IMG/VR virus record: IMGVR_UViG_3300027749_002876
Location: 248,001 to 312,000 of that record
Direction: 5' to 3' (one strand)
DNA length: 64,000 bases
The position numbers and the translations under genes were made by a program. Under the pieces are notes generated by a model. That model saw only the letters and a list, made by a program, of their open reading frames with translations, was not told the origin of the DNA and searched no databases. The stretch's first letter is position 1. Each line of letters starts with the position of its first letter. Below, piece after piece: positions 19,824 through 40,471 of this stretch.

Positions 19824-19829
19824 ATAAAA

Positions 19830-21734: not shown

Positions 21735-22685
21735 TTATGCGTAACCGTAACTTGCGGCTGCTAGACTGTATCTAGCAGTACCTACTCCTGTAGTATCAGT
21801 TGCTGCCACACCTGTATTACTTACTAAGTTGGTTATTGCTGTTAGTCCCGAATTAGTTGATCCATATCCAAATATAGCAGTATCAACACCATAACTAGCG
21901 GCTGCTAGATCAGTTCTAGCAGTACCAACACCTGTTGTATCAGTTGCTACTATACCTGTATTGCTTACTTTGTTTGTTACTGACATATATGCAGAGGTAA
22001 CATCAAGCCCATAACCAAATATAGCTTGACCACTAGAACCATATCCTGCGGCTGCAAGTCCAATTCTGGCAGTACCAACACCGGTAGTATCCCCGGCAAC
22101 TACTCCTGTGTTGGACACTAAGTTGGTAATTGAATAATATCCTATACCAGATCGGTTTCCATATCCAAAAATAGCTTTATCTGTTCCGTACCCTGCGGCC
22201 GCAAGAAATCGTCTGATAGTACCGACACCTGTTGTATCTGTAGCTACCACACCTGTGTTTGATACTAGGTTAGTAAGTGAATATGTAGTGGCGTTTGCAT
22301 ATCCATAACCAAATATAGCTTTGTCAGTGCCATAACCGGCGGCTGCTAAACCAGCTCTAGCAGTACCTACTCCTGTAGTATCAGTTGCTACTACACCGGT
22401 GTTTGATACTAGGTTGGTTGCTGCCGTGTAACTAGTGCTTCCACCATAACCAAATAAGGCTTTATTTGTGCCATAACCTGCTGCCGCTAACTCATATCTA
22501 GCAGTACCAACACCTGTTGTATCAGTTGCTACTACACCGGTGTTTGATACTAGGTTGGTTATTGATACTCCGGGATTACTTCCTGCAGTACCATATCCAA
22601 ATATAGCTTTTTGTGAGGGAGGGGGAGGTAGAGTGATTGAGTAACCACCACTGAATGTTACCCCTGAAAAAACCATGTCTGCCAT
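21735..22685 (-). CDS. six-repeat Kelch-like beta-propeller protein, copy 1
   Basis: six ~48-aa repeats KAIFGYG-x(var)-SITNLVSNTGVVATDTTGVGTAR-xx-LAAAGYGTD. Confidence 0.8.
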   Translation of the reverse strand: MADMVFSGVTFSGGYSITLPPPPSQKAIFGYGTAGSNPGVSITNLVSNTGVVATDTTGVGTARYELAAAGYGTNKALFGYGGSTSYTAATNLVSNTGVVATDTTGVGTARAGLAAAGYGTDKAIFGYGYANATTYSLTNLVSNTGVVATDTTGVGTIRRFLAAAGYGTDKAIFGYGNRSGIGYYSITNLVSNTGVVAGDTTGVGTARIGLAAAGYGSSGQAIFGYGLDVTSAYMSVTNKVSNTGIVATDTTGVGTARTDLAAASYGVDTAIFGYGSTNSGLTAITNLVSNTGVAATDTTGVGTARYSLAAASYGYA

Positions 22686-22716
22686 AATATATTATCCTTT
22701 TGTTTTGTTTGTGAGA

Positions 22717-23649
22717 TTACGAACCAAATGTTGCGGCTGCAATGTAATTTCTAGCATAACCTACTCCTGTAGTATCAGTAGATACTACACCTGTATTTGA
22801 TACTAAATTGGTTATTGAAAGTGGACTACCGTTAGTGCCATAGCCAAATATAGCTTGTCCGGAGCTTCCATAGCCTGCAGCCGCCAAAGCATATCTAGTA
22901 GTACCAACACCAGTAGTATCTGTGGCAACTACGCCTGAATTAGAAACTTTATTGGTCATTGATAGTCCTGATCCAGTCCCTCCATATCCAAATATAGCTT
23001 TATCAGTTCCATAAGTTGCGGCAGCAAGATAACCTCTAGCAGTACCAACACCTGCAGTATCAGTAGCAACTACACCTGTATTTGATACTAGATTGGTTAT
23101 TGATACATCAGAAAAACCACTATCAAATCCATATCCAAAAATAGCTTTATCAGTTCCATAACCTGCGGCTGCTAATGCACCTCTAGCAGTACCTACACCT
23201 GTTGTATCTGTAGCAACTACCCCTGAATTAGAAACTTTATTGGTCATTGATATAGTATCAGATGTATACCCATATCCAAATATAGCCTTATCTGTGCCAT
23301 AACCTGCGGCAGCAAGATAACCTCTAGCAGTACCAACACCTGCAGTATCAGTAGCAACTACACCCGTGTTGCTTACTAGATTGGTTATAGATGAAGATAT
23401 ACCACTAACCAATCCATATCCAAATATTGCCTTGTCAGTGCCATAACTTGCGGCTGCCAACAAATTTCTAGCAGTACCTACACCTGAGGTATCATTAGCA
23501 ACTACACCGGTGCTTGATACAATGTTGGTTATTGATACTGCGCCGGATGAACCTGATCCATATCCAAAAATAGCTCTAATATTTGGGGGAGGTGCTGTAA
23601 TTGCAAATCCACCACTGAAATTTACACCTGAAAAAACTATGTCTGCCAT
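22717..23649 (-). CDS. six-repeat Kelch-like beta-propeller protein, copy 2
   Basis: same six-repeat architecture. Confidence 0.8.
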   Translation of the reverse strand: MADIVFSGVNFSGGFAITAPPPNIRAIFGYGSGSSGAVSITNIVSSTGVVANDTSGVGTARNLLAAASYGTDKAIFGYGLVSGISSSITNLVSNTGVVATDTAGVGTARGYLAAAGYGTDKAIFGYGYTSDTISMTNKVSNSGVVATDTTGVGTARGALAAAGYGTDKAIFGYGFDSGFSDVSITNLVSNTGVVATDTAGVGTARGYLAAATYGTDKAIFGYGGTGSGLSMTNKVSNSGVVATDTTGVGTTRYALAAAGYGSSGQAIFGYGTNGSPLSITNLVSNTGVVSTDTTGVGYARNYIAAATFGS

Positions 23650-23680
23650 ACTATGTTATCCTTTTGTTTTGTTTGTGAGA

Positions 23681-24637
23681 CTATCTACTGTAACTTGAGG
23701 CTGCTAGTTCTTGTCTAGCAGTACCGACACCAGTTGTATCCGTAGCAACTACACCCGTATTTGATACCAGGTTAGTGATTGCTGTTACTGTAGCAGATCC
23801 ATCATTTACACTACCATATCCAAAAATAGCTTTATCTGCACCGTATCCTGCGGCAGCCGGGTTTGCTCTTACGGTACCTACACCTGTAGTATCAGTAGCT
23901 ACTACACCTGTGTTACTTACTAAGTTGGTCACATTTGTAACAGGATATCCTACTCCATATCCAAATATAGCTTTATCAGTGCCATAAGTTGCGGCTCCTA
24001 ACTGACTTCTAGCGGTTCCAACTCCCGTAGTGTCTGTAGCAACTACACCCGTATTTGATACTAAGTTGGTCATTGATACTCGGGTAAAACCATTATCGGC
24101 TCCATATCCAAAAATAGCTTTGTCAGTTCCATAACCAGTGGCCGCAAGAGCTTGTCTAGCAGTACCAACACCTGTAGTATCTGTAGCAACAACACCTGTA
24201 TTTGACACTAGGTTGGTTATTGAGTACACGGTACTGCTTGTAGCACCATACCCAAATATAGCTTGTCCAGAGCTACCATATCCTGCGGCTGCTATATAAC
24301 TCCTAGCAGTACCTACACCTGTTGTATCACTAGCAACTACACCGGTGTTTGATACTAGATTGGTTACTGATTGATATACATTAGTATTATTCCTTCCATA
24401 ACCAAATATAGCTTTATCTGTACCATATACAGTGGCTGCTAGATTTACCCTAGTAGTGCCAACACCTGCAGTATCAGTAGCGACAACGCCTGTATTTGAT
24501 ACTAGGTTAGTTATTGATACATAAAGATTAGTGACAGTTGAACCATATCCAAATATTGCCTTAGCTGAGGGTGGAGGAGGTGTAATGCTAATCCCAGTAC
24601 CAATTGTTATTCCTGATCCAAATATTATATCTGCCAT
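23681..24637 (-). CDS. six-repeat Kelch-like beta-propeller protein, copy 3
   Basis: same six-repeat architecture. Confidence 0.8.
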   Translation of the reverse strand: MADIIFGSGITIGTGISITPPPPSAKAIFGYGSTVTNLYVSITNLVSNTGVVATDTAGVGTTRVNLAATVYGTDKAIFGYGRNNTNVYQSVTNLVSNTGVVASDTTGVGTARSYIAAAGYGSSGQAIFGYGATSSTVYSITNLVSNTGVVATDTTGVGTARQALAATGYGTDKAIFGYGADNGFTRVSMTNLVSNTGVVATDTTGVGTARSQLGAATYGTDKAIFGYGVGYPVTNVTNLVSNTGVVATDTTGVGTVRANPAAAGYGADKAIFGYGSVNDGSATVTAITNLVSNTGVVATDTTGVGTARQELAASSYSR

Positions 24638-24665
24638 ACTATCCTTTTATGTTATTTTTTATATA

Positions 24666-25031
24666 CTACACTTCAAGCCAAGATGTTGTATCTTCATCCC
24701 ATTTATACATTTTATCATCTGTTGGCATTGGTACTGGTGAGTCCCACAAGCATTTAGTTTCATTTAATGTCCATGAATTGTAAGGCTTTGGTGGTATGAA
24801 TGCGTCAAGTGTTTCATCATAAGTGTACCCAATACCAGCATAGTTTTTGCGATACGGTGTACCACTGTTTGAATGAACACCACCATAAGTGTTGTAACTT
24901 GTGCGCTTGCAGATTTGACCGCGGACTTCACCGTAATGTTGTTCCCAATCAATATTGTTTTCCCCTTCATCTTTACCTACTATAACTTCAGTAACAATAT
25001 TATTTTCATTTAAAAATGCGTAATGTGCCAT
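24666..25031 (-). CDS. conserved phage protein, possible fibre/appendage assembly factor
   Basis: MAHYAFL...RKNYAGIGYTYD...FIPPKP...W; follows Gly-rich gene; ATAAATA at 25059-25065. Confidence 0.55.
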   Translation of the reverse strand: MAHYAFLNENNIVTEVIVGKDEGENNIDWEQHYGEVRGQICKRTSYNTYGGVHSNSGTPYRKNYAGIGYTYDETLDAFIPPKPYNSWTLNETKCLWDSPVPMPTDDKMYKWDEDTTSWLEV

Positions 25032-25072
25032 GTTTTTTCCTTTTTTAATTATTAATACTATTTATGCTAAAT

Positions 25073-27283
25073 TTAGAAGGTAATAGTTCCTGTACCGGCA
25101 GTAAATCTATACACTCTGTAGCCAGAACGAGATGGTTGGTCATAAGTTAAACCACTACCAATTGTTAGGGCAGGGTAACTGGTTGGATAAGCAATAATAA
25201 CTACTCCTGATCCACCGTTCCATCCAACGCTACCGGCATTAGAAGTTCTAGATCCGCCTCCGCCGTTGCCTGAATTTGCTGTAGCATCTCCACTAACAGT
25301 ATTAGACCAATAAGCCTGACCCCCTGCCGAATATGCAACATCTGAACCAGTAATGCCTTGTAAGGCGGCGCCTCCTCCGGTACCGCCTCCGGTTACACCG
25401 GTATCTATATCAGTTTTAGATTGACCAACTCCATTAGAACCACCTCCACCGGATCCTATCCAACCTCTATAGACACCTACATTAGTTGATGTACCTCCAT
25501 TAAATCCTTGACCGGATGTTGCTGTTCCACCTGCCATAGCTCCCGGAGTGTTGGTTGAACCATAAGAAGCTCCGCCTCCAGAACCACCACTACCACCGGG
25601 GTTAGTTAAGCCTGCCCCATATCCTCCACCGATTGCGGTATATCCAGTTAAAACTGAGTTAGTTCCGGCGCCAGCATTACCAGAGGTTTGTTGTCCTGCA
25701 CTTCCTCCTGCGCCCACGGTGACTGTATAGGAACCACTGAATGAAGCTGTAGCATAACCACCACCTACCATACCACCAGCACCTCCACCACCACCAGAAC
25801 CACCGCCTCCACCTGCTACCACAAGATATTCAGAAAGAGTTGAAGGTGCTTCTGTAGTAATACTATTACTTGGTGCACTTGGACTACTCGTACCAACGCT
25901 ATTTGTTGCTGTAACTGTAAATGTATAACTAGTAGAACCAGTTAAACCAGTCATATTAATAGTACCACTACCTGCTTGGCTTAATGTACCGGTGATTCCA
26001 CCTGGACTACTTGTTGCTGTATAACTTGTAATTGTAGCACCGCCGTTGCTTGCTGGTTGAGTAAATGAAACTGTAGCTGTAGTTGCACCAGTAGCTGTTG
26101 CTGTACCTATTGTTGGAGCTCCGGATACTGTAGGTGCTGCAACAGTAATTGTTCCTGTACCCGCAGTAAATGTATATATTGTGTTTCCACCTGAAGTTGT
26201 TTTAGTATATGTTAGTCCTACACTAATTGATGATAAGTCAGCATAACTAGATGGATAGGAAATGATAACAATACCAGAGCCACCGTTAACTGTTTGTCGT
26301 TGTGGTGATACACCGCCGGCGCCTCCACCTGTATTTGTAGTTCCGTCTGTAGCTGATGCGGCTCCTGCTCCTCCACCTTGCCCACCAGTACCTCCGCCAC
26401 CTAAACCGCCAATACCCTTAAGTGTATTCCATGTTGTGTAATCTGCACCTGCACCACCACCACCTGCATAGTATGTAGATGTTCCGGTAATACTTGAAGC
26501 AAGACCTACACCTCCATTACCTGCTTGCCCTGCTGTTAAGTTGGCACCAACTGCGCCGGCGCCACCGCCTCCACCGCCTCCGCGATAACTGCCATTTTGA
26601 GAATCACCGCCGTTATTACCTTGACCAACTGTGCCAGTACCGCCATAATCAAAATATCCGCCAGCTCCTCCACCCGAACCACCATTCAAGCCATTAGAAT
26701 CAGCATAAGCACCACCGCCACCTAATGAAGTAATTGATGAGAACACGCTATCACCTCCATTTGCAGTTCCAACTCCACCTGCACCAACCGTTACTGTAAA
26801 TGTACCACTGACAGAAAATCCTGAAGCTGTTCTGTACCCGCCGGCTCCGCCTCCTCCGCCATGATATGCACCAGCACATCCGCCGCCACCTGCGACTACA
26901 AGGTAATTAACAGATGATGGTGCTGACGGTGCTGATGTAGTAATACTATTACTTGCACTACTTGCATTACTTGTTCCTATTGCATTGGTTGCTGTAACTG
27001 TAAATGTATAACTAGTAGAACCAGTTAAACCACTAACAGTAATAGTACCACTACCTGCTTGACTTAATGTACCGGTGATTCCACCGGGACTGCTTGTAGC
27101 TGTATAACTTGTTATAGTTGAGCCGCCATTACTTGCAGGTTGAGTAAATGCCACTGTGGCTGTAGTTGAACCAGTAGACGTTGCAGTACCTATTGTAGGT
27201 GCACCCGGTACTGAGGGTGGTGGAGGTGTAATACTAACTCCACCTGAAATTGATATTCCGCCTGTAAATACGATATCCGCCAT
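25073..27283 (-). CDS. virion-associated protein with two FN3 + glycine-rich domain units
   Basis: Start moved to MADIVF at 27283 (AAGGAA RBS); 2x [PGAPTIGTAT...YTFTVTATN FN3 + YLVVAGGG...GGSGIVII Gly-rich domain]. Confidence 0.8.
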   Translation of the reverse strand: MADIVFTGGISISGGVSITPPPPSVPGAPTIGTATSTGSTTATVAFTQPASNGGSTITSYTATSSPGGITGTLSQAGSGTITVSGLTGSTSYTFTVTATNAIGTSNASSASNSITTSAPSAPSSVNYLVVAGGGGCAGAYHGGGGGAGGYRTASGFSVSGTFTVTVGAGGVGTANGGDSVFSSITSLGGGGAYADSNGLNGGSGGGAGGYFDYGGTGTVGQGNNGGDSQNGSYRGGGGGGGAGAVGANLTAGQAGNGGVGLASSITGTSTYYAGGGGAGADYTTWNTLKGIGGLGGGGTGGQGGGAGAASATDGTTNTGGGAGGVSPQRQTVNGGSGIVIISYPSSYADLSSISVGLTYTKTTSGGNTIYTFTAGTGTITVAAPTVSGAPTIGTATATGATTATVSFTQPASNGGATITSYTATSSPGGITGTLSQAGSGTINMTGLTGSTSYTFTVTATNSVGTSSPSAPSNSITTEAPSTLSEYLVVAGGGGGSGGGGGAGGMVGGGYATASFSGSYTVTVGAGGSAGQQTSGNAGAGTNSVLTGYTAIGGGYGAGLTNPGGSGGSGGGASYGSTNTPGAMAGGTATSGQGFNGGTSTNVGVYRGWIGSGGGGSNGVGQSKTDIDTGVTGGGTGGGAALQGITGSDVAYSAGGQAYWSNTVSGDATANSGNGGGGSRTSNAGSVGWNGGSGVVIIAYPTSYPALTIGSGLTYDQPSRSGYRVYRFTAGTGTITF

Positions 27284-27320
27284 GATATATTCTTCCTTTA
27301 TAGTATTTAGCAAAAAACAA

Positions 27321-27342
27321 AAAAGGCTCAAAAAGAGCCTTT
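27321..27342 (-). terminator. intrinsic terminator, AGGCTC/GAGCCT family
   Basis: AAAAGGCTC-AAAAA-GAGCCTTT hairpin. Confidence 0.75.
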
Positions 27343-27362
27343 TTATTCAATCTCAATGGAGA

Positions 27363-28247
27363 TTAGAAGCGATGTGTTACACCAACTCCAACTTGTTTTA
27401 CGTCATTTGTTGTGCCTTTAGCGTCAACATTACGATAGTTGACACCTAAACTAGTACGCTTACTGAAGTTATAATCAGCACCCATTGCATAAGCTTTTAC
27501 ATCAGTATTTGTTTTACCATAACTAGCTTTTGCTGTGATTGCACCAAATTGCTGGCTTGCACCAATCAAATCACCAGTACGTGCTACGGCACCTTTGTCA
27601 TCACTATGTGTGTAAAATACTTGTGTATTGCCTAATTTTGCGCTACCAGCATACACTGTGCTTTTCTCAACACCTTGAGTATATTGTGCAACTGTTGCGT
27701 TAATACCAAACAATTTTGCACTTGCACTATAGCTAGTTGCTTCTGTACCTACACCATTTTGTGTGCGGTCATAAGTTGCAGTTACACCCTTCATTGGTGT
27801 TAATGCAAAGAATGTACCATTGCTGATACGCAGACCACGCAAGTTATGTACATCACCTGCAACACTACCATACAATGTGCCAAAAGCGTCATTGTTAGTG
27901 ATTGCTAAAAAGTGACTGTGTAGATTGCGACCCAAGTCAACACTACCAATACTATTTACTAAGCCGATTGTTGATTGACGATCACCTAGTTTAGTTGCGG
28001 CGCCACCTGTTGGATCATTAGCTGCCAAACTTGTATCTAATACTACACGAGCCTTCAAACCTGCACCAATGTTTTCTGTAGCAGAAAGTGTGATGTTGCT
28101 TGTTGGGTCAGTAGCTAGACTTGTTTTGCTAATAGCACCAGTTTTAGTATTGTCAACAAATTCGCTGATTTTACCATTTAAACTAACTTGTGCTGTAGCA
28201 ACCATTGTTGTTGCTGCCAATAATGTCGCTATTGCGATTTTCTTCAT
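27363..28247 (-). CDS. Gram-negative trimeric porin
   Basis: signal peptide MKKIAIATLLAATTMVATA, ENIGAGLKA, DRQSTIGL..GSVDLGR, GADYNFSKRT, C-terminal VGVTHRF beta-signal. Confidence 0.88.
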   Translation of the reverse strand: MKKIAIATLLAATTMVATAQVSLNGKISEFVDNTKTGAISKTSLATDPTSNITLSATENIGAGLKARVVLDTSLAANDPTGGAATKLGDRQSTIGLVNSIGSVDLGRNLHSHFLAITNNDAFGTLYGSVAGDVHNLRGLRISNGTFFALTPMKGVTATYDRTQNGVGTEATSYSASAKLFGINATVAQYTQGVEKSTVYAGSAKLGNTQVFYTHSDDKGAVARTGDLIGASQQFGAITAKASYGKTNTDVKAYAMGADYNFSKRTSLGVNYRNVDAKGTTNDVKQVGVGVTHRF

Positions 28248-28361
28248 AAGATTTTCCTTTAAAAATAAACCTGATTTCTCAGGCTAGACTAATATTTATG
28301 TTGTTTTTTATTGTTGATATAAAATAGTTGTTTGCGTAATAACAACGAGTTTAACGTGGAT

Positions 28362-28381
28362 AAAGGCTCTTTCGAGCCTTT
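28362..28381 (-). terminator. intrinsic terminator, AGGCTC/GAGCCT family
   Basis: AAAGGCTC-TTTC-GAGCCTTT hairpin. Confidence 0.7.
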
Positions 28382-28399
28382 GTTTTTGTGGTTGTTTGA

Positions 28400-29341
28400 T
28401 TATGCGTAACCGTAACTTGCGGCTGCTAGTCCACTTCTAGCAGTACCGACACCTGTAGTATCTGTAGCAACTACCCCGGTGTTTGATACTAGGTTGGTCA
28501 ACGATAGATAACTTTCTCTACCCCCGTATCCAAATATAGCAGTATCAACTCCATAGCCAGCGGCTGCTAGATAAGTTCTACCAGTACCGACAGCGGTAGT
28601 ATCTGTAGCAACAACTCCTGTGTTTGATACTAGGTTGGTCATTCCGTAATACGGGCTACCACCAGCTCCTAAACCAAATCCAAAGATAGCTTTATCGGTG
28701 CCAAAAGTTGCGGCGGCTAACGCATATCTGGCCTGCCCTACACCTGTTGTATCTGTAGCAACTACACCTGTATTTGATACTTTATTGGTTACTGATGTAG
28801 TGGTAGGCGTAGCAGAGTATCCATATCCAAAAATAGCTTTATCGGTACCATAACCTGCGGCTGCAGGGTTACTCCTAGCAGTGCCAACACCGGCTGTGTC
28901 GTTAGCAACTACACCTGTGTTACTTACTAGATTGGTTATTGCTGTTCTAACCCAGCTACCATTATTGTATATACCATAACCAAAGATGGCTTTATCTGTT
29001 CCATAGCCTGCGGCTGCTAGTCCACTTCTAGCAGTACCGACACCTGTAGTATCTGTAGCAACTACACCGGTATTTGATACTTTGTTGGTTATTGCGGTCT
29101 GTGGAGTACCATATCCATATATAGCTTTATCACTACCGTAGCCTGCGGCAGCTGGTTCGCTTCTAGCTGTACCAACACCTGTAGTATCTGCGGCAACTAC
29201 CCCTGTGTTACTTACTAGATTGGTCATTGATAAAGAAGGACCATTAGTACCATATCCAAATATTGCCTTACTTGTTGGGGGAGGAGGTTGTGGTGTTACA
29301 CTCAATCCACCCGTAAATGTTAGTCCACCTGTAAAATCCAT
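28400..29341 (-). CDS. six-repeat Kelch-like beta-propeller protein, copy 4
   Basis: same six-repeat architecture. Confidence 0.8.
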   Translation of the reverse strand: MDFTGGLTFTGGLSVTPQPPPPTSKAIFGYGTNGPSLSMTNLVSNTGVVAADTTGVGTARSEPAAAGYGSDKAIYGYGTPQTAITNKVSNTGVVATDTTGVGTARSGLAAAGYGTDKAIFGYGIYNNGSWVRTAITNLVSNTGVVANDTAGVGTARSNPAAAGYGTDKAIFGYGYSATPTTTSVTNKVSNTGVVATDTTGVGQARYALAAATFGTDKAIFGFGLGAGGSPYYGMTNLVSNTGVVATDTTAVGTGRTYLAAAGYGVDTAIFGYGGRESYLSLTNLVSNTGVVATDTTGVGTARSGLAAASYGYA

Positions 29342-29372: not shown

Positions 29373-30317
29373 TTAAGTTGATCCGTAACTTGCGGCGGCT
29401 AGATGATACCTAGCAGTACCCACACCGGTTGTATTTGTAGCTACTACACCAGTATTTGATACCAGGTTGGTTATGGATGTGACATTAATCACACTACTAT
29501 ATCCATATCCAAATATAGCTTTATCATTATTATAAGTTGCGGCAGCTAATCCAAGCCTTGCAGTACCAACTCCAGTTGTATCCGTAGCAACAACACCAGT
29601 GTTTGATACTAGATTAGTTACTGCTGTATAACTAACGCCACCATTAAGAAAGCCGTAGCCAAATATGGCTTTATCAGTTCCATAACCTACGGCTGCTAGC
29701 TCACCTCTAGCAGTACCAACACCGGTAACATCATTGGCTACTACACCCGTATTTGATACTAGGTTAGTTAGTGAATAAGTTACGCTAGATTGAGTAGTAC
29801 CATAACCAAATATAGCAGTACCAGTTCCATAAGTTGCGGCTGCCAATCCAACTCTAGCTGTACCAACACCTGTAACATCATTTCCAACAACACCCGTATT
29901 TGATACTAGGTTGGTCATTGAATAAACGCCACCACCACCATAACCAAAAATAGCTTTATCTGTACCATAACCAGTGGCCGCAAGATTATTTCTAACAGTA
30001 CCAACACCAGTTGTATCTGTAGCAACAACACCTGTATTTGACACTAGATTAGTTATTGATACAGTACTTGCTCCAGTATATCCATATCCAAATATAGCTT
30101 TGTCGTTTCCATAGCCTGCGGCTGCTAGATAGTATCTAGCAGTGCCAACACCGGTAGTATCACCTGCAACTACACCTGTATTTGATACTTTGTTAGTCAT
30201 TGATACTGAGGGTGTACCTCCATATCCAAAAATAGCATATGTACTATATGAGGGTGGAGGTAGAGTTACTGAGTAACCACCACTAAATGTTACACCTGAA
30301 AAAACCATATCTGCCAT
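29373..30317 (-). CDS. six-repeat Kelch-like beta-propeller protein, copy 5
   Basis: same architecture; GATAAATA at 30336-30343 and AAGGAG RBS. Confidence 0.8.
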   Translation of the reverse strand: MADMVFSGVTFSGGYSVTLPPPSYSTYAIFGYGGTPSVSMTNKVSNTGVVAGDTTGVGTARYYLAAAGYGNDKAIFGYGYTGASTVSITNLVSNTGVVATDTTGVGTVRNNLAATGYGTDKAIFGYGGGGVYSMTNLVSNTGVVGNDVTGVGTARVGLAAATYGTGTAIFGYGTTQSSVTYSLTNLVSNTGVVANDVTGVGTARGELAAVGYGTDKAIFGYGFLNGGVSYTAVTNLVSNTGVVATDTTGVGTARLGLAAATYNNDKAIFGYGYSSVINVTSITNLVSNTGVVATNTTGVGTARYHLAAASYGST

Positions 30318-30352
30318 AATATATCTCCTTTAATGTATTTATCAGAAAAGAA

Positions 30353-30375
30353 AAAAGGCTCAAAAAGAGCCTTTT
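30353..30375 (-). terminator. intrinsic terminator, AGGCTC/GAGCCT family
   Basis: identical hairpin to 27321-27342. Confidence 0.75.
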
Positions 30376-32065: not shown

Positions 32066-32670
32066 TTTTTATTAAACAATAAACTAGAAGCGATTATCAT
32101 CGCTGTTTGTGCGGCTTCTACATCTGTGGGCTGTTCTTTCCAACCTACACTAATCTGTCCAATGAACACGCCGGGTTCAGCTGGTACGCTAATACGACAC
32201 ATATAGTTTACACCGTATTCTTTGTATACAAAGCCAATAAGACTTTGTGGTTTTGAATATGGACTACAAGGAATCTTACCTGACATTAAACCAATGACAT
32301 CATTGTTGTTGTCATAGTTTTTACTAAATAATCCAACTTCTAACCCGTCATTTCTTTTATCTCTACCACCATTGCGTGTAGCTAAGTAAACAACTTTTCG
32401 TGTGTTAATTAATGTGTTGACTTCAAGAAAGGCAACCATTTCTACTTCAGTATTTTTTAATAAGAAATTGTATGCCTCATCATACTTACCGTTCATTTTA
32501 GGTAATGCTTGCTGGGCACGATAACTTGCTAAAAAGGCATCTTTTTCCGTATAAACTATCCAACCACCAAAGCCTAGTATACAGAGAAACACAACGGTAA
32601 ATAGGCGAAATGGACTTTCGCCTATATAGGTTAATAAACTAAAGAGAAAATCTTTAAGTTTGTCCACCAA
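32062..32670 (-). CDS. single-TM protein resembling T4 holin T (periplasmic GAF-like domain)
   Basis: 202 aa; amphipathic N-terminus, one TM, WIVYTEKDAFLASYR and GVNYMCRI..GVFIGQISVGWK resemble T4 gpT segments as recalled. Confidence 0.55.
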   Translation of the reverse strand: MVDKLKDFLFSLLTYIGESPFRLFTVVFLCILGFGGWIVYTEKDAFLASYRAQQALPKMNGKYDEAYNFLLKNTEVEMVAFLEVNTLINTRKVVYLATRNGGRDKRNDGLEVGLFSKNYDNNNDVIGLMSGKIPCSPYSKPQSLIGFVYKEYGVNYMCRISVPAEPGVFIGQISVGWKEQPTDVEAAQTAMIIASSLLFNKK

Positions 32671-33940: not shown

Positions 33941-34759
33941 TTATTTCTTTTCAGCTTTGTATCGTTCCATTAACTTTTTAGTGTCAATGTTGTTGTATTC
34001 ATTTTTAATAACGTAATTAATAATGCTTAACAATTGCAGTGATTTAGGATTTACTGCGATAGCAATATTATCAACACTGTCACTGATTGTGATACTCTTT
34101 GTGCTAATTGCGGCTTCTGGTTTTTCAAAAGCGATTTTCTTAATCTCAAATTCATCACGATAAGCGGCTGCGATATCACCACGTGTAACTTTGTCAATAA
34201 TCACATCCCATTTATCTTCCGGGAGAAATACAGCATTAGGGAAATTAGTACGTGCAAATGTGTCATAGCTTGAGTTGCGAATGAAACTTATTTTACCATT
34301 GAAATTTCTAATCACTTGATATACTTCACGACCCTGACTGTTTTGGCTTAACCATAAACGATTGATAACTAAACTTTGTCTAAGTTTAATATAAGGATCA
34401 CTGAATCTAACTACTTGTAGTCTGGGCCCAGTTACAGATAATTTACTAACTGCAACGTCGGCACGACCATCTCTTACTTGCTCAACGACTTCGGCAAAAC
34501 TTTCTGCATCTCGTCTAAACTGTACTGGAACTCCAAGCATTACGCCAATTCTCCGTGCAATTTCAACGTCAAGACCATGTATATCATCCTCGCCCCCACT
34601 GAAGAAGGGAGGGTTATCTTTTTTGGTCATTGCCACAATAAGAACGTTTGCTTTCTTAATTGCGGCAATATCATTGGGTAGTGGTACGGTACTAGTTGGT
34701 AATTGTGCGTGGACAACTGAACTAAACAATACACATAATAATAGTAGTAGTTTTTTCAT
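33941..34759 (-). CDS. periplasmic amino-acid substrate-binding protein (family 3)
   Basis: signal peptide, DNPPFF, GLDVEIARRIG, GRADVAVSKLSVTGPR, FSDPY; ATAAATA 7 nt upstream. Confidence 0.9.
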   Translation of the reverse strand: MKKLLLLLCVLFSSVVHAQLPTSTVPLPNDIAAIKKANVLIVAMTKKDNPPFFSGGEDDIHGLDVEIARRIGVMLGVPVQFRRDAESFAEVVEQVRDGRADVAVSKLSVTGPRLQVVRFSDPYIKLRQSLVINRLWLSQNSQGREVYQVIRNFNGKISFIRNSSYDTFARTNFPNAVFLPEDKWDVIIDKVTRGDIAAAYRDEFEIKKIAFEKPEAAISTKSITISDSVDNIAIAVNPKSLQLLSIINYVIKNEYNNIDTKKLMERYKAEKK

Positions 34760-35437: not shown

Positions 35438-35626
35438 TTAATTCCAGCCCTGTGGCCATTTTGAATTGTTTGTTTTTTGGTCAGCCAACATTCTGATCCA
35501 TTCTTTACGCACAGCAAGATCATGCTTCATACGTTCTAATTGATCTAGTGAGTTATCACTATAAAAGATATAGTAAAATGGAATACCAAATCCAAAACCC
35601 AACATAAAATAAGCAATGTAGTCCAT
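35438..35626 (-). CDS. small membrane protein
   Basis: 62 aa, N-terminal hydrophobic helix. Confidence 0.6.
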   Translation of the reverse strand: MDYIAYFMLGFGFGIPFYYIFYSDNSLDQLERMKHDLAVRKEWIRMLADQKTNNSKWPQGWN

Positions 35627-35627
35627 A

Positions 35628-38099
35628 TTAATTTCCTAACTTATATTGTTGGTTAACCATTTCTTGATGTTTGGTATCACTACCACCAGTCAACCCACGT
35701 AGTAATCTAACATTGTCAACTGTTTGTTGATTCTTATATACTTCTTTTATTTCATAAAATGATGCATCTTTTAAAACAAAAGAATAAGCATTGAATCCAG
35801 TAGGTACACTAGCTATTAATGCAATGTCAATATTACCTGCTAATTCATTTGGCAACACATTTCTATTCACTGAGCTTGTGGGTTGAGTTATATTGTTTTG
35901 CATTAACTCAAATCGTTGTTGCATTATTATTTCTGATAATGGATTACCTGCTTTACCTATTCCACTAAAACTAGACATTTGATACTGATGTGTTTCAACT
36001 TCATATTGTATTGAATCTAATTTAGGTTGATATATTGGTGCTTGCTGTGGTAACATTGACACAGTACCAGAACTAGACAGTACTACAGGATTATAAGCAA
36101 ACAAATTACGGGTAACTACTATACCGGTGCCACTATTAGATTGTTGCTGAGTTTCAACCTCTAGTGTGGTAGGTGGTTTTAATATAACAACTTGTGTTGA
36201 TTGCGTTTCTTGTTGTAGTACTGGAGGGATATACACAAACTGCGGAGTTTGTATTACATTGATAGAATGTGATAATGCTTGTTGTGAATCCTGTTGTTGT
36301 ACTTGAGGACCTGCTCTACTTCCCTGTTGTTGTGTTTGCATACTATTTTGCGTAGTTTGTTGTTGATTAAATTGTGTTGATGATTGTATACTCGTTTGTG
36401 TTGATTGACTAGCAAATGTAGCGGATGTAGTTGCGCTACTAGCACTCATATCTTGGTTCATACTAACTAAAGCGTTACTAGTAGCTTGTGAACTTTGCAT
36501 TGTATTTTCTAATGTTTTTGCGGCATTAGATACTGCGACATTTTGTGTAGCTTTATCTTTATCTTGTGAAGATTTAACGACACTCATTGCTAACTTACTA
36601 GGGCCAGCGCCGCCACCTGATTGTTGTTGATTTGATGATCCGGATGCTTGAGTTTGTGCTGGACCACCTGCAGGTCCGGGTGATCCTGTTGGTGCAGGTT
36701 GTGATGGATCTGATTGTGCCACTGCTGTTTGCTGATTTGAATCTTGTGGTGGACTTGATTGTTGCTGTTGTTGCTGTTGCGATTGTTGTTGAGTTTGTTC
36801 TGGTTGTGTATTACCCTGATTTTGATCTAGTTGTCCAGTATTAGCAGACATTGAGGTTCCACCTGAGGATACAATAGCACCTGAGGCACTAGCAACTGTT
36901 GATCCTAATAACATATTCTTAGCAAACGCAACAGCATATCCAGAACACGATGCATTATACAATGGATTAGATACACACGGATCTGCTGTATAGACTAAAC
37001 TTGCTGAAAAATTACCTACAGATGATCCTGTACCTGAAGTGTTGCCAGTAAGGCTTACTCTGCCTAACGATATTTGATTCAAACTAGTTGGCAACAAATA
37101 CTGTCCACTTACTGATCCACTAGTTCCATCACCGGATAATGTATTACTTTTTGAATATATTGTTTGATTATTACTATTAGTAAGTCGTGCCGTAGCACTT
37201 ACTTGGGCTGGAATATTCATATACCAACTACAAGAACCATCTTGGTTAGTAGCTGTACAACCGTACCAACTTTGTCCTACATTGTAATCAAAACCATAAT
37301 TAAAGCCGTGTACAGTAGCACCAATACCGCCGTTCTTTAATGCTGTATTGATAGCAAATGATTGATTTACAGCACTACCCCATACATTACTATTGAAAAG
37401 ATTGTCACCGGTCGCAACTGTACTAAACTTAGGACAAGTTGTACTATAAGCAGGATTGAGGGCACATGGATCAACACGATATTTTAAACTGAAGCTGACA
37501 TTATAAATTTCAGGACCATAGTTTCCAGCCCAGAAGTTTGTATCTCTACCTACAAATCCTACTTGTGCGTTAGTATAATTTGATGCGGCAACTGGGTTAG
37601 CAAATGTTTCACTGAAGTTAAAGTTAGTCCAGTTATATTTTCTATTGGTTTGGTTTGTATAATCATAGTTAGCCATTAGACCCGAACTGCCATATAACTT
37701 AACATAAGCGGCTAGGTAATCTTGTTGGCCGTTATCCCACCCATTGCCGTTCTTGGCTGTAAACCCAAAGTTGAATCCACTAAGTTGTACACCATTACCG
37801 CCGGCAGCCAATGCTTTGTTTATGTTAACCACTTGATTTAAATCTACTTGGCCATAAGAATAGTTAATATATCCTCCGGGTCTAACACTGGGGTTTGGCC
37901 CGCAATTGCCTGCACCACCGGCACCAAAACATACTTGATTAACATAGACGCCATTATTCCAAGTGCTGGTTGTATCCGTAGCAGAATTACCGTAATTTAT
38001 TAAATTACCGGTAGTACTATCTACTTGACTATTACTTGAAAGCGTTATGAATGAGAACGCCAAGCAAAGCGCCAAAGCCAACTTTCTTGTAAGTGTCAT
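35628..38099 (-). CDS. large secreted protein, two beta-rich domains plus Q/S/T-rich region
   Basis: signal-like N-terminus; two DPC..NP.Y...C motifs; poly-Q tracts. Confidence 0.7.
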   Translation of the reverse strand: MTLTRKLALALCLAFSFITLSSNSQVDSTTGNLINYGNSATDTTSTWNNGVYVNQVCFGAGGAGNCGPNPSVRPGGYINYSYGQVDLNQVVNINKALAAGGNGVQLSGFNFGFTAKNGNGWDNGQQDYLAAYVKLYGSSGLMANYDYTNQTNRKYNWTNFNFSETFANPVAASNYTNAQVGFVGRDTNFWAGNYGPEIYNVSFSLKYRVDPCALNPAYSTTCPKFSTVATGDNLFNSNVWGSAVNQSFAINTALKNGGIGATVHGFNYGFDYNVGQSWYGCTATNQDGSCSWYMNIPAQVSATARLTNSNNQTIYSKSNTLSGDGTSGSVSGQYLLPTSLNQISLGRVSLTGNTSGTGSSVGNFSASLVYTADPCVSNPLYNASCSGYAVAFAKNMLLGSTVASASGAIVSSGGTSMSANTGQLDQNQGNTQPEQTQQQSQQQQQQQSSPPQDSNQQTAVAQSDPSQPAPTGSPGPAGGPAQTQASGSSNQQQSGGGAGPSKLAMSVVKSSQDKDKATQNVAVSNAAKTLENTMQSSQATSNALVSMNQDMSASSATTSATFASQSTQTSIQSSTQFNQQQTTQNSMQTQQQGSRAGPQVQQQDSQQALSHSINVIQTPQFVYIPPVLQQETQSTQVVILKPPTTLEVETQQQSNSGTGIVVTRNLFAYNPVVLSSSGTVSMLPQQAPIYQPKLDSIQYEVETHQYQMSSFSGIGKAGNPLSEIIMQQRFELMQNNITQPTSSVNRNVLPNELAGNIDIALIASVPTGFNAYSFVLKDASFYEIKEVYKNQQTVDNVRLLRGLTGGSDTKHQEMVNQQYKLGN

Positions 38100-39423
38100 C
38101 TATTTCTTCCTTTTGAAGTTTTGGTAACTTATCTGGATTTGCTTCCCAAGCTGCCTTAGCTTGTTCACCGATCTTACCTTCGTATGGGCAAGGGGTACCT
38201 GCAGCCAACATAGCATCAAATACTCTTCGGTCTTGACACATGGTAGCAACAGCGGCTACTTTCATACCCATGTCATATAGTGTTTTAGATAACTTTAATC
38301 GTTCACAATTTAAATCACGACTAGTACTACCTGCACCAACACCAAATATTTGTGTTTGAATACTACCACTTGTACCAGTACTACATAAATCAGCATTACC
38401 ACCACTCATCATTGCTGGAGCCACCGCAGTTGGTGGAGGTTGAATAACTTTCTGTGTGACCACACTTTCGTTTTTATTAATATTAGTCACTTCACCGCTG
38501 TTAATGTTTTGATTGACATTAGCATTTTGATTAACATTAGTGCTTGTACTAGTATTGTTGTTGTTATTTGTCATAGTACCGTTGTTGGTATTTTGATTAA
38601 TGTTAGTCATTGTACCACTATTGATGTTAGTGTTTGTGTTACTTGTTGTAGCCGTAGTGTTATTGATATTACGGTTAGTCATATCACCGGTATTAACATT
38701 GTTATTAGTATTTGTACTTGTGCTAGTGTTAACATTGTTGTTATTGTTAGTCATTGTACCATATTGATAATTTGTGTTAGTACTTGTGCTAACGTTATTG
38801 TTGTTATTAGTATTAGTGCTTGTGCTAACATTATTGTTATTGTAAGTCATTGTACCACTATTAATATTGTTATTTGTATTAACTGATGTACTTGCTGATG
38901 TACTGTTATTATTATTGTTAAACGTTTGAGTTCCGCTGTTTACATTATTGTTAGTATTAACATTGGTGCTCGAACTAGTGCTGGTATTAACATTGTTATT
39001 GTTGTTGGTCATAGTACCAGTATTAACGTTGTTATTGTTAAACGTTTGTGTTCCACTGTTGACGTTGTTATTATTGTTTGTATAGGTAACACTACCACTC
39101 ATAACGTTGTTATTGTTATTGTTGTTGGTCATTGTGCCACTGTTAACATTGTTATTGTTGTTGGTGTTAGTTGTGCCACCTGTTAAGTTGGTATTATTGT
39201 TATTAGTAATAGTTCCGCTGTTAACATTGTTAGTGTTAACTGTACTTACACTATTACTGGTACTGTTAGTATCAACCAAAGATTTACTATCATAAGTACC
39301 CTGATTAATAACCGTACTTGTTCCGGTAGTTGTTCCACCAGTAGAACCTGATGTAGTAGTAGTTTGTGCTTGCGTAGTGAATGCCATACCCAGCATGGCA
39401 ACTATAGCGAGAATCTTTTTCAT
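38032..39423 (-). CDS. secreted Asn/Thr-rich repeat protein with Cys-containing C-terminal domain
   Basis: signal peptide MKKILAIVAMLGMAFTTQA; repeated NNNNVNSGTMT; four Cys in C-terminal domain; hydrophobic tail. Confidence 0.75.
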   Translation of the reverse strand: MKKILAIVAMLGMAFTTQAQTTTTSGSTGGTTTGTSTVINQGTYDSKSLVDTNSTSNSVSTVNTNNVNSGTITNNNNTNLTGGTTNTNNNNNVNSGTMTNNNNNNNVMSGSVTYTNNNNNVNSGTQTFNNNNVNTGTMTNNNNNVNTSTSSSTNVNTNNNVNSGTQTFNNNNNSTSASTSVNTNNNINSGTMTYNNNNVSTSTNTNNNNNVSTSTNTNYQYGTMTNNNNNVNTSTSTNTNNNVNTGDMTNRNINNTTATTSNTNTNINSGTMTNINQNTNNGTMTNNNNNTSTSTNVNQNANVNQNINSGEVTNINKNESVVTQKVIQPPPTAVAPAMMSGGNADLCSTGTSGSIQTQIFGVGAGSTSRDLNCERLKLSKTLYDMGMKVAAVATMCQDRRVFDAMLAAGTPCPYEGKIGEQAKAAWEANPDKLPKLQKEEIDDTYKKVGFGALLGVLIHNAFK

Positions 39424-39494
39424 TTTTATTATCATCCTCTAGAGATAATATTTATTTGTTTTTTAGTTGAGAAATATCAAGCTTTATTAAATAG

Positions 39495-39515
39495 GAAAGG
39501 CTCTTAGAGCCTTTC
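39495..39515 (-). terminator. intrinsic terminator, AGGCTC/GAGCCT family
   Basis: GAAAGGCTC-TTA-GAGCCTTTC hairpin. Confidence 0.7.
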
Positions 39516-39532
39516 GTTTTGACTTTGATAAA

Positions 39533-40471
39533 TTATATACTATAATTTGAGGCGGCTAGTGCATATCTAGCAGTACCAACACCAGTAACGTCATTAGCAA
39601 CTACACCGGTGTTTGATACTAGGTTAGTTATTGCTGTTACACTTGCAGGTGAAAGTATCCTTCCATATCCAAATATTGCAGTATCTAAACCATAACCTGC
39701 GGCTGCTAGAATATATCTAGCGGTACCAACACCAGATGTATTAGTTGCAACTACACCTGTATTTGATACTTTATTGGTTATTGAAACATTTGGATTTCCA
39801 CCATAACCAAAAATAGCTTTATCTGTGCCATAAGTTGCGGCTGCTAATTGAGTTCTGGCAGTACCAACACCTGCAGTATCAGTAGCAACTACACCGGTAT
39901 TACTTACTAGATTGGTTATTGAAACTGGACCAACTGCGCCGTCTTCTCCAAATCCAAAAATTGCTTTATCTGTACCATAACCTGCGGCTGCTAGTGCATA
40001 TCTAGCAGTACCAACACCGGAAACGTCGGTGGAGACTACACCTGTGTTACTTACTAGGTTAGTTACTGCTGAGTAGGAGTAGGTATATCCATATCCAAAT
40101 ATAGCTTTATCAGTACCATAACCTGCCGCTCCTAGTTGACTTCTAGCAGTCCCTACTCCCGTAGTATCTGTAGCAACTACCCCTGTATTACTTACTAAAT
40201 TGGTCATTGATACAAGTCCGGAGTTGTTAAATCCATATCCAAATAGTGCTTTATCAGTACCATAGCCCGCTGCCGCTAGTTCATCTCTAGCAGTACCGAC
40301 TCCTGTTGTATCGGTTGCAACAACCCCAGTGTTACTTACTAGATTAGTTATTGATATATATGATGGGCTGGAATATCCATATCCAAAGATTGCTTTATAA
40401 GAGGGTGGGGGAGGTGCTGTAATTGCAAATCCACCACTGAAATTTACACCTGAAAAAATTATGTCTGCCAT
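39533..40471 (-). CDS. six-repeat Kelch-like beta-propeller protein, copy 6
   Basis: same architecture; GATAAATA at 40491-40498 and AAGGA RBS. Confidence 0.8.
   Translation of the reverse strand: MADIIFSGVNFSGGFAITAPPPPSYKAIFGYGYSSPSYISITNLVSNTGVVATDTTGVGTARDELAAAGYGTDKALFGYGFNNSGLVSMTNLVSNTGVVATDTTGVGTARSQLGAAGYGTDKAIFGYGYTYSYSAVTNLVSNTGVVSTDVSGVGTARYALAAAGYGTDKAIFGFGEDGAVGPVSITNLVSNTGVVATDTAGVGTARTQLAAATYGTDKAIFGYGGNPNVSITNKVSNTGVVATNTSGVGTARYILAAAGYGLDTAIFGYGRILSPASVTAITNLVSNTGVVANDVTGVGTARYALAASNYSI

What the first reader, a model, noticed from the sequence alone, without database searches (positions are those of the whole stretch)
21735..40471. Six-gene repertoire of Kelch-like propellers with an invariant scaffold and hypervariable, antibody-like loops
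Seen: six paralogs, each exactly six ~48-aa repeats (36 in total). The framework (AIFGYG...TNLVSNTGVVATDTTGVGTAR..LAAA.YG) is almost invariant. The loop after GYG varies in length and sequence (TAGSNPGV, NRSGIGYY, FDSGFSDV, IYNNGSWVRT, EDGAVGPV, RILSPASV) and the two residues after GTAR also vary, with Tyr/Ser/Gly/Asn/Thr enrichment. Known: in Kelch propellers the corresponding two loops form the ligand-binding face. Inference: a diversified binding repertoire (receptor/glycan recognition or decoys) built on a repeat scaffold, reminiscent of variable lymphocyte receptors. I know of no description of this as a system.
Basis: partly seen in the sequence, partly recalled or inferred. Interest (0 to 1): 0.88.

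Follow-up and report, generated by a model that had tools for sequence, protein, structure and literature searches.

The report
Phage propeller proteins with hypervariable face
A giant freshwater T4-like phage carries at least 14 copies (six in this window) of an unnamed six-bladed Kelch-type propeller protein whose scaffold is frozen while one face differs completely in every blade, which most likely makes them a set of late-expressed surface binding modules, although binding and virion location are not shown.

Summary
Six minus-strand genes (309-318 aa) each encode a roughly 25-aa N-terminal leader plus six 45-51-aa repeats. All 36 blades share an almost invariant framework. All 36 loops after GYG differ, as do most of the two-residue sites after GTAR.

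An AlphaFold model built with 71 homologues is confident (pLDDT 94.9). Its best solved matches are KLHL and Keap1 Kelch domains (TM 0.76-0.85). No Pfam, NCBIfam or PDB sequence profile detects the family. By strand topology both variable sites lie on one face, and the two short loops on the other face are invariant.

Framework conservation reflects purifying selection (pN 0.10, pS 0.49), not recent gene conversion. The loops are randomised but compositionally constrained (G/S/T/Y/V-rich, no Lys).

The same 524-kb phage genome holds at least eight more copies, beside the major capsid gene and in the neck/sheath module. Relatives are all phage proteins, often fused to collagen, Laminin-G, Mtd_N or FN3 domains.

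The genes have late-promoter-like elements. Loop sequences are identical in contigs from three lake samples, so the repertoire is inherited, not somatic or DGR-driven.

Most likely these are virion-surface binding modules. Binding and virion location remain inferred.

The parts
21735..22685 (-). K1, propeller paralog, 316 aa: 26-aa N-terminal leader (MADMVFSGVTFSGGYSITLPPPP) plus six blades
   Evidence: last gene of the unit that ends at the hairpin at 21696-21717
22717..23649 (-). K2, propeller paralog, 310 aa, six blades. Its first 22 codons plus ribosome-binding site are 98% identical in DNA to those of K6.
   Evidence: family D9
23681..24637 (-). K3, propeller paralog, 318 aa, six blades
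24666..25031 (-). 121-aa gene of unknown function (phrog_7759) lying between the glycine-rich protein and K3 in the same transcription unit, with CATAAATA upstream
25073..27283 (-). 736-aa protein (start taken at the ATG at 27283) with two FN3 and two Gly_rich_2 domains. It carries the same N-terminal leader (MADIVFTGGISISGGVSITPPPP) as the propellers. It is the first gene of the unit containing K3, K2 and K1.
   Evidence: A relative in another phage fuses a glycine-rich domain to the propeller (A0A6J5PIS4).
27284..27344 (-). Cassette of terminator hairpin, promoter-like element and ribosome-binding site upstream of the glycine-rich protein, 86% identical to the cassette upstream of K5
   Evidence: family D11
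28400..29341 (-). K4, propeller paralog, 313 aa, six blades. Its leader subtype (MDFTGGLTFTGGLSVTPQPPP) is the one used by copies beside the capsid gene elsewhere in the genome. A hairpin at 28358-28385 follows it.
29373..30317 (-). K5, propeller paralog, 314 aa, six blades
30318..30375 (-). Terminator hairpin (30353-30375), late-promoter-like GATAAATACATTA and ribosome-binding site upstream of K5
39533..40471 (-). K6, propeller paralog, 312 aa, six blades. This is the protein that was modelled. It is monocistronic, flanked by hairpins at 39495-39515 and 40503-40528.
40472..40528 (-). Terminator hairpin, late-promoter-like GATAAATACATTA and ribosome-binding site upstream of K6

Best explanation
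The six genes belong to a large, unnamed, phage-only family of six-bladed Kelch-type beta-propellers. The window's phage is a freshwater jumbo T4-like myovirus on a contig of 524 kb, and it carries at least 14 full-length copies.

Each protein has a short conserved N-terminal leader ending in a proline run, followed by six units in the order strand B, C, D, A. The C-terminal LAAA.YG strand therefore completes blade 1 and closes the ring.

One axial face carries the invariant A-B turn (GTDK) and C-D turn (SNTG). The other face carries six hypervariable B-C hairpin tips and six variable residue pairs at the end of the D-A loop. This second face is the one that Keap1 and KLHL Kelch domains use to bind substrates.

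I infer that each paralog presents one unique composite binding surface rich in Tyr, Ser, Gly and Thr. I also infer that the proteins are made late and displayed on the virion, docked through the shared N-terminal leader. They would then act as a germline-encoded panel of adhesins or auxiliary receptor-binding modules that widens or hedges what the phage can attach to.

Shown: the repeat anatomy, the fold, selection on the scaffold, loop composition, copy number, genomic context, domain fusions, and stability across samples.

Inferred: binding itself, the ligand class, virion display and the docking site.
For: Anatomy.

Fold: AlphaFold2 with a 71-sequence alignment gives pLDDT 94.9 and pTM 0.91. 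Foldseek against the PDB puts the KLHL17, KLHL12, KLHL20 and Keap1 Kelch domains first, with probability 1.00 and TM 0.76-0.85. The ESM Atlas structure search agrees.

Faces: the model's secondary-structure string shows the loop after GYG as an extended B-C hairpin (residues 26-45 of K6). In a four-stranded up-and-down blade, the B-C and D-A connections lie at the same end.

Selection: framework pS is 0.49 and pN 0.10, falling to 0.04 over the 24 most conserved codons. Ser is encoded by both TCN and AGY at the same framework position, so conservation acts at protein level. The loops are all distinct, restricted to 4-10 residues, G/S/T/Y/V-rich and free of Lys. The same pattern holds in 409 blades from about 80 loci.

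Late or structural context:
- GATAAATACATTA lies upstream of K5 and K6, and the same element precedes the gene next to TerL. TATAAATAC precedes TerL itself.
- Four paralogs lie downstream of the gp23 major capsid gene, after one intervening 326-aa ORF.
- Two paralogs lie between neck/sheath-stabiliser genes and the tail sheath gene.

Surface-type fusion partners in relatives: Mtd_N and Laminin_G_3, a collagen triple helix, multiple Laminin_G_3 domains and SBBP, fn3 and a glycine-rich domain. The N-terminal leader and promoter cassette are shared with the FN3/Gly_rich_2 protein in the window.

Precedent: jumbo phage CBB has three clustered Kelch-like proteins, one of them found in virions by mass spectrometry (PMC5259590).
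Against: There is no direct evidence that these proteins are in the virion or bind anything. No cultured phage carries the family: tblastn of K4 and K6 against 50,697 phage records found nothing, while the TerL control worked. No proteomics can therefore be borrowed.

The short forms have no recognisable trimerisation or fibre domain. A conventional tail fibre with an intramolecular-chaperone domain is encoded elsewhere in the window (61406-62641), so the propellers need not be the primary receptor-binding proteins.

The test for diversifying selection is inconclusive. pN at the two variable codons (0.65-0.67) exceeds framework pS (0.49-0.55), but pS at those same codons is also 0.67, which indicates saturation.

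Contigs from several samples show no loop microdiversity, although contigs drop rare variants.

The assignment of faces rests on topology, not on measured coordinates.
Confidence: 0.55

Rival explanations
1. The paralogs are intracellular host-takeover binders. Each would capture a different host protein inside the infected cell, as poxvirus Kelch proteins or the ankyrin and Kelch arrays of giant viruses do, and they would not be part of the virion.
For: The best structural matches are substrate-adaptor Kelch domains. There is no signal peptide and no fibre domain in the short forms. Six copies sit among accessory, host-like genes rather than in the core structural module.
Against: The genes carry late-promoter-like elements shared with packaging and structural genes. 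Other copies sit beside the capsid, neck and sheath genes. Fusion partners in relatives are extracellular or fibre-type domains: collagen, Laminin_G_3, Mtd_N and fn3. There is no BTB or other effector domain. The Lys- and Glu-poor, G/T/S/N/V-rich composition is typical of phage fibre proteins, which is my own knowledge rather than a test made here.
Confidence: 0.15
2. The proteins are structural or decoration components (capsid or neck cement, spacers) whose function lies in the invariant scaffold. The loops would then be simply unconstrained surface segments, not binding sites.
For: The variable sites sit at saturation with pN roughly equal to pS, which fits neutrality. The scaffold and the opposite face are extraordinarily conserved, as expected if a fixed partner is bound there. 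Four copies lie downstream of the major capsid gene, after one intervening ORF.
Against: Loop composition is far from the phage's proteome and far from what AT-rich neutral drift would give: no Lys, very little Glu, Ile or Leu, and 55% G/S/T/Y. Loop length stays within 4-10 residues, and no copy is disrupted in 14 genes and 84 blades. Fourteen intact paralogs with no two loops alike are hard to explain without selection for difference.
Confidence: 0.17
3. The proteins are multivalent propeller lectins of the PLL, tachylectin or AAL kind, with one sugar site per blade or per blade interface.
For: A few relatives carry a precomputed PF26607 (Beta-prop_PLL) flag. Laminin_G_3 lectin-like domains are frequent fusion partners.
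Against: Propeller lectins repeat the same binding residues in each blade, which is my own knowledge. Here the exposed residues differ in every blade. The PF26607 flag was not reproduced by hmmscan at E up to 0.01. Glycan binding through a single composite face is not excluded, and it is part of the best explanation.
Confidence: 0.08
4. The variation comes from an assembly artefact or from a hypermutation system (DGR, cassette switching).
For: Short-read assemblers can build chimeras in repeat arrays. Logan unitigs break at the repeats and show many cross-paralog joints.
Against: The same sequence appears in two IMG/VR assemblies from different samples. Logan contigs of 280-620 nt from three runs span several blades with no differences. 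No reverse transcriptase was found among the ORFs scanned. Loops differ in length, not only at adenine-templated positions. All copies are complete, separately translated genes.
Confidence: 0.03

Closest known systems
Kelch-repeat beta-propellers (Keap1 and KLHL substrate-binding domains)
   Same: Six four-stranded blades of about 48 aa. The order of features matches: Arg, strand A, short turn, strand B ending in a Gly-x-Gly, long B-C loop, strand C, turn, strand D. The ring is closed by a terminal strand. The B-C and D-A loops form one face, which is the ligand face in Keap1 and KLHL (TM 0.76-0.85).
   Different: Sequence similarity is undetectable (11-17% identity in the structural alignments; no Kelch HMM hit at E up to 1; no PDB profile hit). 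The GG doublet is replaced by GYG, and the conserved Trp is absent. There is no BTB/BACK domain. The blades are far more alike than in cellular Kelch proteins.
Kelch-like proteins of jumbo phages (CBB_550/552/554, BcepSaruman, phiKZ-like virion proteins)
   Same: They are Kelch-type propellers encoded in clusters by very large myoviruses, and at least one is a virion component (PMC5259590). They are structural neighbours in BFVD (BcepSaruman TM 0.78, Noxifer virion protein TM 0.56).
   Different: They are recognisable by Kelch profiles and have few copies. No frozen scaffold with a hypervariable face has been reported for them. Identity to this family is only 14-22%.
T-even gp38 adhesins (conserved glycine-rich motifs alternating with hypervariable segments)
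   Same: Both occur in T4-like phages and pair a conserved scaffold with short hypervariable loops grouped at one end. In gp38 these loops set receptor specificity. This comparison comes from my own knowledge and was not tested here.
   Different: The fold is unrelated (a polyglycine-II sandwich rather than a propeller). gp38 is a single copy at the tail-fibre tip, against at least 14 stand-alone genes here.
Multi-receptor-binding-protein phages with shared N-terminal anchors (for example branched tail-fibre or tailspike sets of large Klebsiella and Escherichia phages)
   Same: Many paralogous binding heads are encoded in one genome, and each carries a short conserved N-terminal adaptor. The adaptor is exchanged between paralogs: K2 and K6 are 98% identical over 81 nt.
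   Different: In those systems the heads are trimeric beta-helix depolymerases or fibres. Here the heads are monomer-sized propellers, and attachment is unproven.
DGR targets (Mtd), antibodies and VLRs
   Same: A fixed scaffold with concentrated variability and Tyr/Ser-rich contact loops. Some relatives carry an Mtd_N domain.
   Different: No reverse transcriptase or template repeat was found, there is no somatic assembly, and loops are stable across samples. Diversity is carried entirely by inherited paralogs and blades.

Membership tests
Kelch repeat family (Pfam Kelch_1-6) | Match to the Kelch sequence profiles | tested here: not met
   hmmscan of all six paralogs against Pfam-A at E up to 1 gave no Kelch family. 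A profile of 71 members against all PDB sequences gave no Kelch hit.
Kelch repeat family (Pfam Kelch_1-6) | Closed propeller of four-stranded blades of about 44-56 aa, most similar in structure to known Kelch domains | tested here: met
   The AlphaFold2 model has pLDDT 94.9. The top 50 PDB matches are Kelch domains or designed Kelch-like propellers, led by KLHL17/12/20 and Keap1 at TM 0.76-0.85 and probability 1.00.
Kelch repeat family (Pfam Kelch_1-6) | Signature residues: GG doublet after strand B, conserved Tyr and Trp, and Arg before strand A | tested here: inconclusive
   The sequence shows an invariant Arg before LAAA and G-Y-G in place of GG. No conserved Trp is present. The Kelch consensus was recalled from knowledge, not aligned here.
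Phage virion-surface adhesin or receptor-binding module | Presence in the virion | not testable with these tools
   No cultured relative exists. Support is contextual only: late-promoter-like elements, position beside capsid, neck and sheath genes, and fibre-type fusion partners.
Phage virion-surface adhesin or receptor-binding module | Variability concentrated at an exposed, distal surface | tested here: met
   Entropy is about 3.5 bits at the two post-Arg sites and 302 of 319 loops are distinct, while most of the 28 framework positions scored stay below 1 bit and the highest reaches 1.5 bits. The loop forms a protruding B-C hairpin in the model. The same-face argument is topological.
Phage virion-surface adhesin or receptor-binding module | Binding to a host-surface ligand | not testable with these tools
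   This needs recombinant protein and binding assays.
Diversity-generating retroelement target | Nearby reverse transcriptase and a template/variable repeat pair with adenine-specific differences | tested here: not met
   No reverse-transcriptase domain was found in the scanned ORFs of the window. Variable sites differ in length and at all bases. Loops are identical across samples.
Somatically diversified receptors (antibody or VLR type) | Diversity generated within an individual or population by rearrangement or conversion from silent cassettes | tested here: not met
   All copies are complete genes with their own ribosome-binding sites. Contigs from three lake runs match the window exactly in loop-bearing stretches. 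Contigs cannot exclude rare variants.
Beta-propeller lectins (PLL, PF26607) | Match to the family profile and the same binding residues repeated in each blade | tested here: not met
   Relatives flagged PF26607 gave no hit in hmmscan at E up to 0.01. The exposed residues differ in every blade.

The most novel reading that the evidence does not exclude
A megaphage carries a germline library of at least 14 propeller binders (84 blades; no loop recurs among the roughly 74 that were parsed cleanly) built on one frozen Kelch-type scaffold. The proteins would dock at several virion sites through interchangeable N-terminal leaders. This would give a single particle combinatorial recognition of many hosts or surfaces. 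It would also be a natural counterpart of engineered Tyr/Ser/Gly-loop binder scaffolds, present in hundreds of uncultured freshwater phages and not yet described as a system.
Probability: 0.3. Interest if true: 0.8.

Novelty: new variant of a known kind. Interest (0 to 1): 0.62.

Why it matters
If these proteins are surface binders, they would be an abundant and entirely uncharacterised class of phage host-recognition or adhesion modules in lakes. The family has 700 representatives at 50% identity, all viral where taxa are known.

They could also help explain how very large phages use extra coding capacity: many recognition heads per particle. The scaffold tolerates any short loop on one face while remaining foldable, and it is predicted with very high confidence. 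That makes it a candidate natural framework for binder engineering.

Labelled propellers could serve as probes to identify the unknown hosts of uncultured freshwater jumbo phages.

Tried and rejected
- **Single-sequence AlphaFold.** The model had pLDDT 47.6 and was unusable. It was replaced by the run with an alignment.
- **Cultured-phage searches.** Megablast and tblastn against 50,697 phage records found nothing for the region, K6, K4 or the glycine-rich protein. The TerL control worked, so the family appears absent from cultured phages. BLAST's low-complexity filter is a caveat.
- **Literature searches for Kelch in phages.** The hits opened turned out to be the author name Kelch. Only the CBB paper was relevant.
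- **Host identification with the symporter gene.** It returned only a 3-kb contig binned into an alphaproteobacterial MAG at 95% identity, probably phage DNA. It was not informative.
- **dN/dS as proof of diversifying selection.** pN at the variable codons exceeds framework pS (ratio 1.34 in the window, 1.21 family-wide). pS at those codons is equally high, so the sites are saturated and the test cannot separate neutrality from positive selection.
- **Read mapping for loop microdiversity.** Only assembled Logan contigs were available. They show identical loops in three runs but cannot reveal rare variants. The many joints are cross-paralog unitig paths, not rearrangements.
- **RNA evidence.** Two lake metatranscriptomes hold only 4% of K6's words. 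This is too weak to count as expression evidence, and the read-laying run had already been used.
- **Rejected mechanisms.** DGR, shufflon and silent-cassette mechanisms were considered and rejected for lack of any component.


Full report
**Setting**

The window comes from a T4-like jumbo myovirus. It encodes UvsX/RecA (2338-3405), gp32 (3878-4879), a T4-type large terminase (7971-9518) and a CobS/CobT-like pair (18301-20933).

Its terminase is closest, at about 50% identity, to those of Sinorhizobium phage Phosso (469 kb) and the Pseudomonas PA5oct group. The window matches two IMG/VR contigs from freshwater samples at 100% identity. One is 170,963 bp, the other 524,565 bp, and the offsets of the first within the second are consistent.

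**The observation**

Six minus-strand ORFs of 309-318 aa are paralogs. They lie at 21735-22685, 22717-23649, 23681-24637, 28400-29341, 29373-30317 and 39533-40471.

Each begins with a leader of about 25 aa of the form M-A-D-x-x-F-S-G-x-x-F-S-G-G-x-x-I-T followed by three or four prolines. Each then splits into exactly six units of 45-51 aa. A unit reads: AIFGYG, a loop of 4-10 residues, S/A-I-TNLVSNTGVVATDTTGVGTAR, two variable residues, LAAAGYG, and a short linker (mostly TDK).

The DNA repeat finder recovers 36 copies of the unit. The interval also contains unrelated genes, described below.

**How conserved, how variable, and why**

- **Framework.** Over 36 framework codons, the 36 blades have mean nucleotide identity 0.79, pS 0.49 and pN 0.10. 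Over the 24 most conserved codons pN is 0.04. The invariant Ser in TNLVS is encoded by both TCN and AGY codons. The sameness is therefore maintained on the protein, not produced by recent gene conversion.
- **Codon choice.** It is nevertheless position-specific (for example GCA-GCC-GCA for AAA). Synonymous sites are thus not fully randomised.
- **Loops.** All 36 are distinct. Same-length pairs are 16% identical in protein (10% expected from composition) and 33.5% identical in DNA (30% expected). They are effectively randomised.
- **Loop composition.** It is strongly constrained: G, S, T and Y make up 55%, Val 10%, Lys 0 of 258 residues against 7% in the rest of the window, and very little Glu, Ile, Leu or Met (chi-square p = 3e-33).
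- **Post-Arg pair.** The two residues after GTAR are 21% Tyr.
- **Family-wide.** The pattern holds in 409 blades from about 80 loci in other phages. Most of the 28 framework positions scored have entropy below 1 bit (the highest is 1.5), the two post-Arg positions have about 3.5 bits, and 302 of 319 loops are distinct.

A formal test for diversifying selection is inconclusive. pN at the two aligned variable codons (0.65 in the window, 0.67 family-wide) exceeds framework pS (0.49 and 0.55; ratios 1.34 and 1.21, bootstrap range 1.14-1.28). But pS at those codons is also 0.67, so they are saturated.

**Structure**

A single-sequence prediction failed (pLDDT 47.6). With an alignment of 71 family members, AlphaFold2 gives pLDDT 94.9 and pTM 0.91.

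Foldseek against the PDB lists Kelch domains of KLHL17, KLHL12, KLHL20 and Keap1 first. Probability is 1.00, TM is 0.76-0.85, and identity is 11-17%. The ESM Atlas holds the same protein with pTM 0.89 and gives the same neighbours.

The secondary-structure string shows the following for each unit:
- strand B (K-AIFG) runs into the variable loop as an extended hairpin with strand C (ITNLV);
- a tight SNTG turn follows;
- strand D is irregular (VVATDTT);
- the GVGTAR-xx connection leads to strand A (LAAAGY) of the next blade.

Because each gene starts with strand B and ends with strand A, the C-terminal strand completes blade 1 and closes the ring.

In an up-and-down four-stranded sheet, the A-B and C-D turns lie at one end and the B-C and D-A connections at the other. 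The two variable sites therefore share one face, and the invariant GTDK and SNTG turns form the opposite face. I could not obtain coordinates to measure this. From established knowledge of Keap1 and KLHL structures, the B-C/D-A face is the substrate-binding face.

**Family membership**

No Pfam family is hit at E up to 1, and no NCBIfam model is hit. A profile of the family finds no solved structure by sequence. PHROGs gives only a weak match to phrog_27227, which has unknown function. The family is Kelch-type by fold but not a detectable member by sequence.

The family is large:
- more than 2,400 clusters at 90% identity among the candidates scored, none with an informative name;
- 700 representatives at 50% identity;
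- every neighbouring ESM Atlas cluster is 100% viral, Uroviricota where the phylum is known.

Many relatives carry the propeller at the C-terminus of longer proteins. The N-terminal partners are Mtd_N, one to four Laminin_G_3 domains, a collagen triple helix, SBBP repeats, fn3 or a glycine-rich domain. These are the domains typical of phage fibres and surface proteins.

**More copies, and where they sit**

The same 524-kb genome has at least eight further six-bladed paralogs:
- four downstream of the prohead protease, scaffold and gp23 major capsid genes, after one intervening 326-aa ORF;
- two between neck/sheath-stabiliser genes and the tail sheath and tube genes;
- two at a fourth site.

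All 14 are 62-73% identical to each other, a star-like pattern expected when frameworks are the same and loops unrelated. The subtype of N-terminal leader tracks the genomic site. No loop recurs among those parsed.

**Expression signals**

K6 is flanked by hairpin terminators. K5-K4 form a second unit, and the glycine-rich protein, a 121-aa gene, K3, K2 and K1 form a third.

K5 and K6 are preceded by GATAAATACATTA a few bases before the ribosome-binding site. The same element precedes the gene next to the terminase and another gene at 11648, and TATAAATAC precedes the terminase. This resembles the T4 late promoter TATAAATA, which I know from the literature rather than from a test here.

The cassette of terminator, promoter-like element and ribosome-binding site is shared by K5 and the 736-aa FN3/Gly_rich_2 protein (86% over 57 nt). 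That protein also carries the same N-terminal leader. The leader-plus-RBS segments of K2 and K6 are 98% identical over 81 nt, although the genes are otherwise about 73% identical. This points to recent exchange of the leader module.

**Stability**

Logan contigs from three freshwater runs match loop-bearing stretches of K1-K3 with no differences. A fourth, more divergent strain shows no excess of differences in the propeller pieces that mapped. No reverse transcriptase or recombinase was found among the ORFs scanned. The diversity is therefore inherited in paralogs and blades, not generated on the fly.

**Interpretation**

The best-supported reading is a panel of late-expressed, virion-displayed binding modules. 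Each would offer one composite hypervariable face and be anchored by a short interchangeable leader.

The main rivals are:
- an intracellular set of host-protein binders;
- structural proteins whose loops are merely unconstrained;
- multivalent lectins;
- an artefact or a hypermutation system.

The nearest published precedent is the Kelch-like proteins of jumbo phages, one of which is a virion component in phage CBB (PMC5259590). The nearest functional analogy in T4-like phages is gp38 with its hypervariable segments between conserved glycine-rich motifs. That comparison is from my own knowledge.

**Verdict**

This is a new, sequence-distinct variant of a known kind of phage protein, notable for its frozen scaffold, its fully randomised face and its copy number.

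Noticed in passing
window 45302-57254: At least seven radical-SAM ORFs sit in one phage region on both strands. One has a B12-binding domain (46338-48320) and two have SPASM domains (53184-54371, 54368-55594). This is an unusually dense set for a phage and suggests a peptide- or sugar-modification pathway.
   Followed up: no
window 27363-28247, 31385-32065, 32654-33928, 33941-34759: Host-like genes are interleaved with the propeller paralogs: a Gram-negative porin (Porin_4), an Asp/Glu racemase, a sodium:dicarboxylate symporter and a family-3 solute-binding protein. The symporter is 95% identical to a 3-kb contig binned into an alphaproteobacterial MAG from Lac Pavin, which is probably mis-binned phage DNA.
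   Followed up: partly
window 40872-45215: A 1447-aa protein carries many repeats of roughly 45-50 aa of the type FDFSWRPDP.EP.FIY.WG. It has no hit in Pfam or NCBIfam.
   Followed up: no
window 35628-38099 and 38032-39435: Two proteins begin with signal-peptide-like N-termini and contain long Asn/Thr/Gln/Ser low-complexity tracts. The second has a 36-nt periodic DNA repeat. Neither has a family hit.
   Followed up: no
whole window; IMGVR_UViG_3300027749_002876: The window belongs to a 524,565-bp IMG/VR contig with T4-like core genes. Contigs of 171 kb and 78 kb from another sample map into it at constant offsets. If this is one genome, it is among the largest T4-like phages. The nearest cultured terminase is that of the 469-kb Sinorhizobium phage Phosso.
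   Followed up: partly
window 22620-22700, 23584-23664, 40406-40486: The N-terminal leader plus ribosome-binding site of K2 and K6 are 98% identical over 81 nt, and K1's is 81% identical. The rest of the genes are much more diverged. This looks like recent exchange of the leader module between paralogs 17 kb apart (family D9).
   Followed up: partly
L001 8908-9888: A 326-aa ORF lies between the gp23 major capsid gene and the first propeller paralog in the capsid-adjacent cluster. From its N-terminal sequence it looks like a GIY-YIG-type homing endonuclease, but no domain search was run on it.
   Followed up: no
window 61406-62641 and 60446-61396: A conventional tail-fibre gene has a fibre-type N-terminus and a C-terminal Peptidase_G2 intramolecular-chaperone domain. 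It is followed by a 316-aa Gly/Thr/Ser-rich protein without a family hit.
   Followed up: no
window 12674-14669: A DegT-type sugar aminotransferase and an NAD-dependent epimerase/dehydratase lie beside thymidylate synthase. The phage may therefore make a modified sugar.
   Followed up: no
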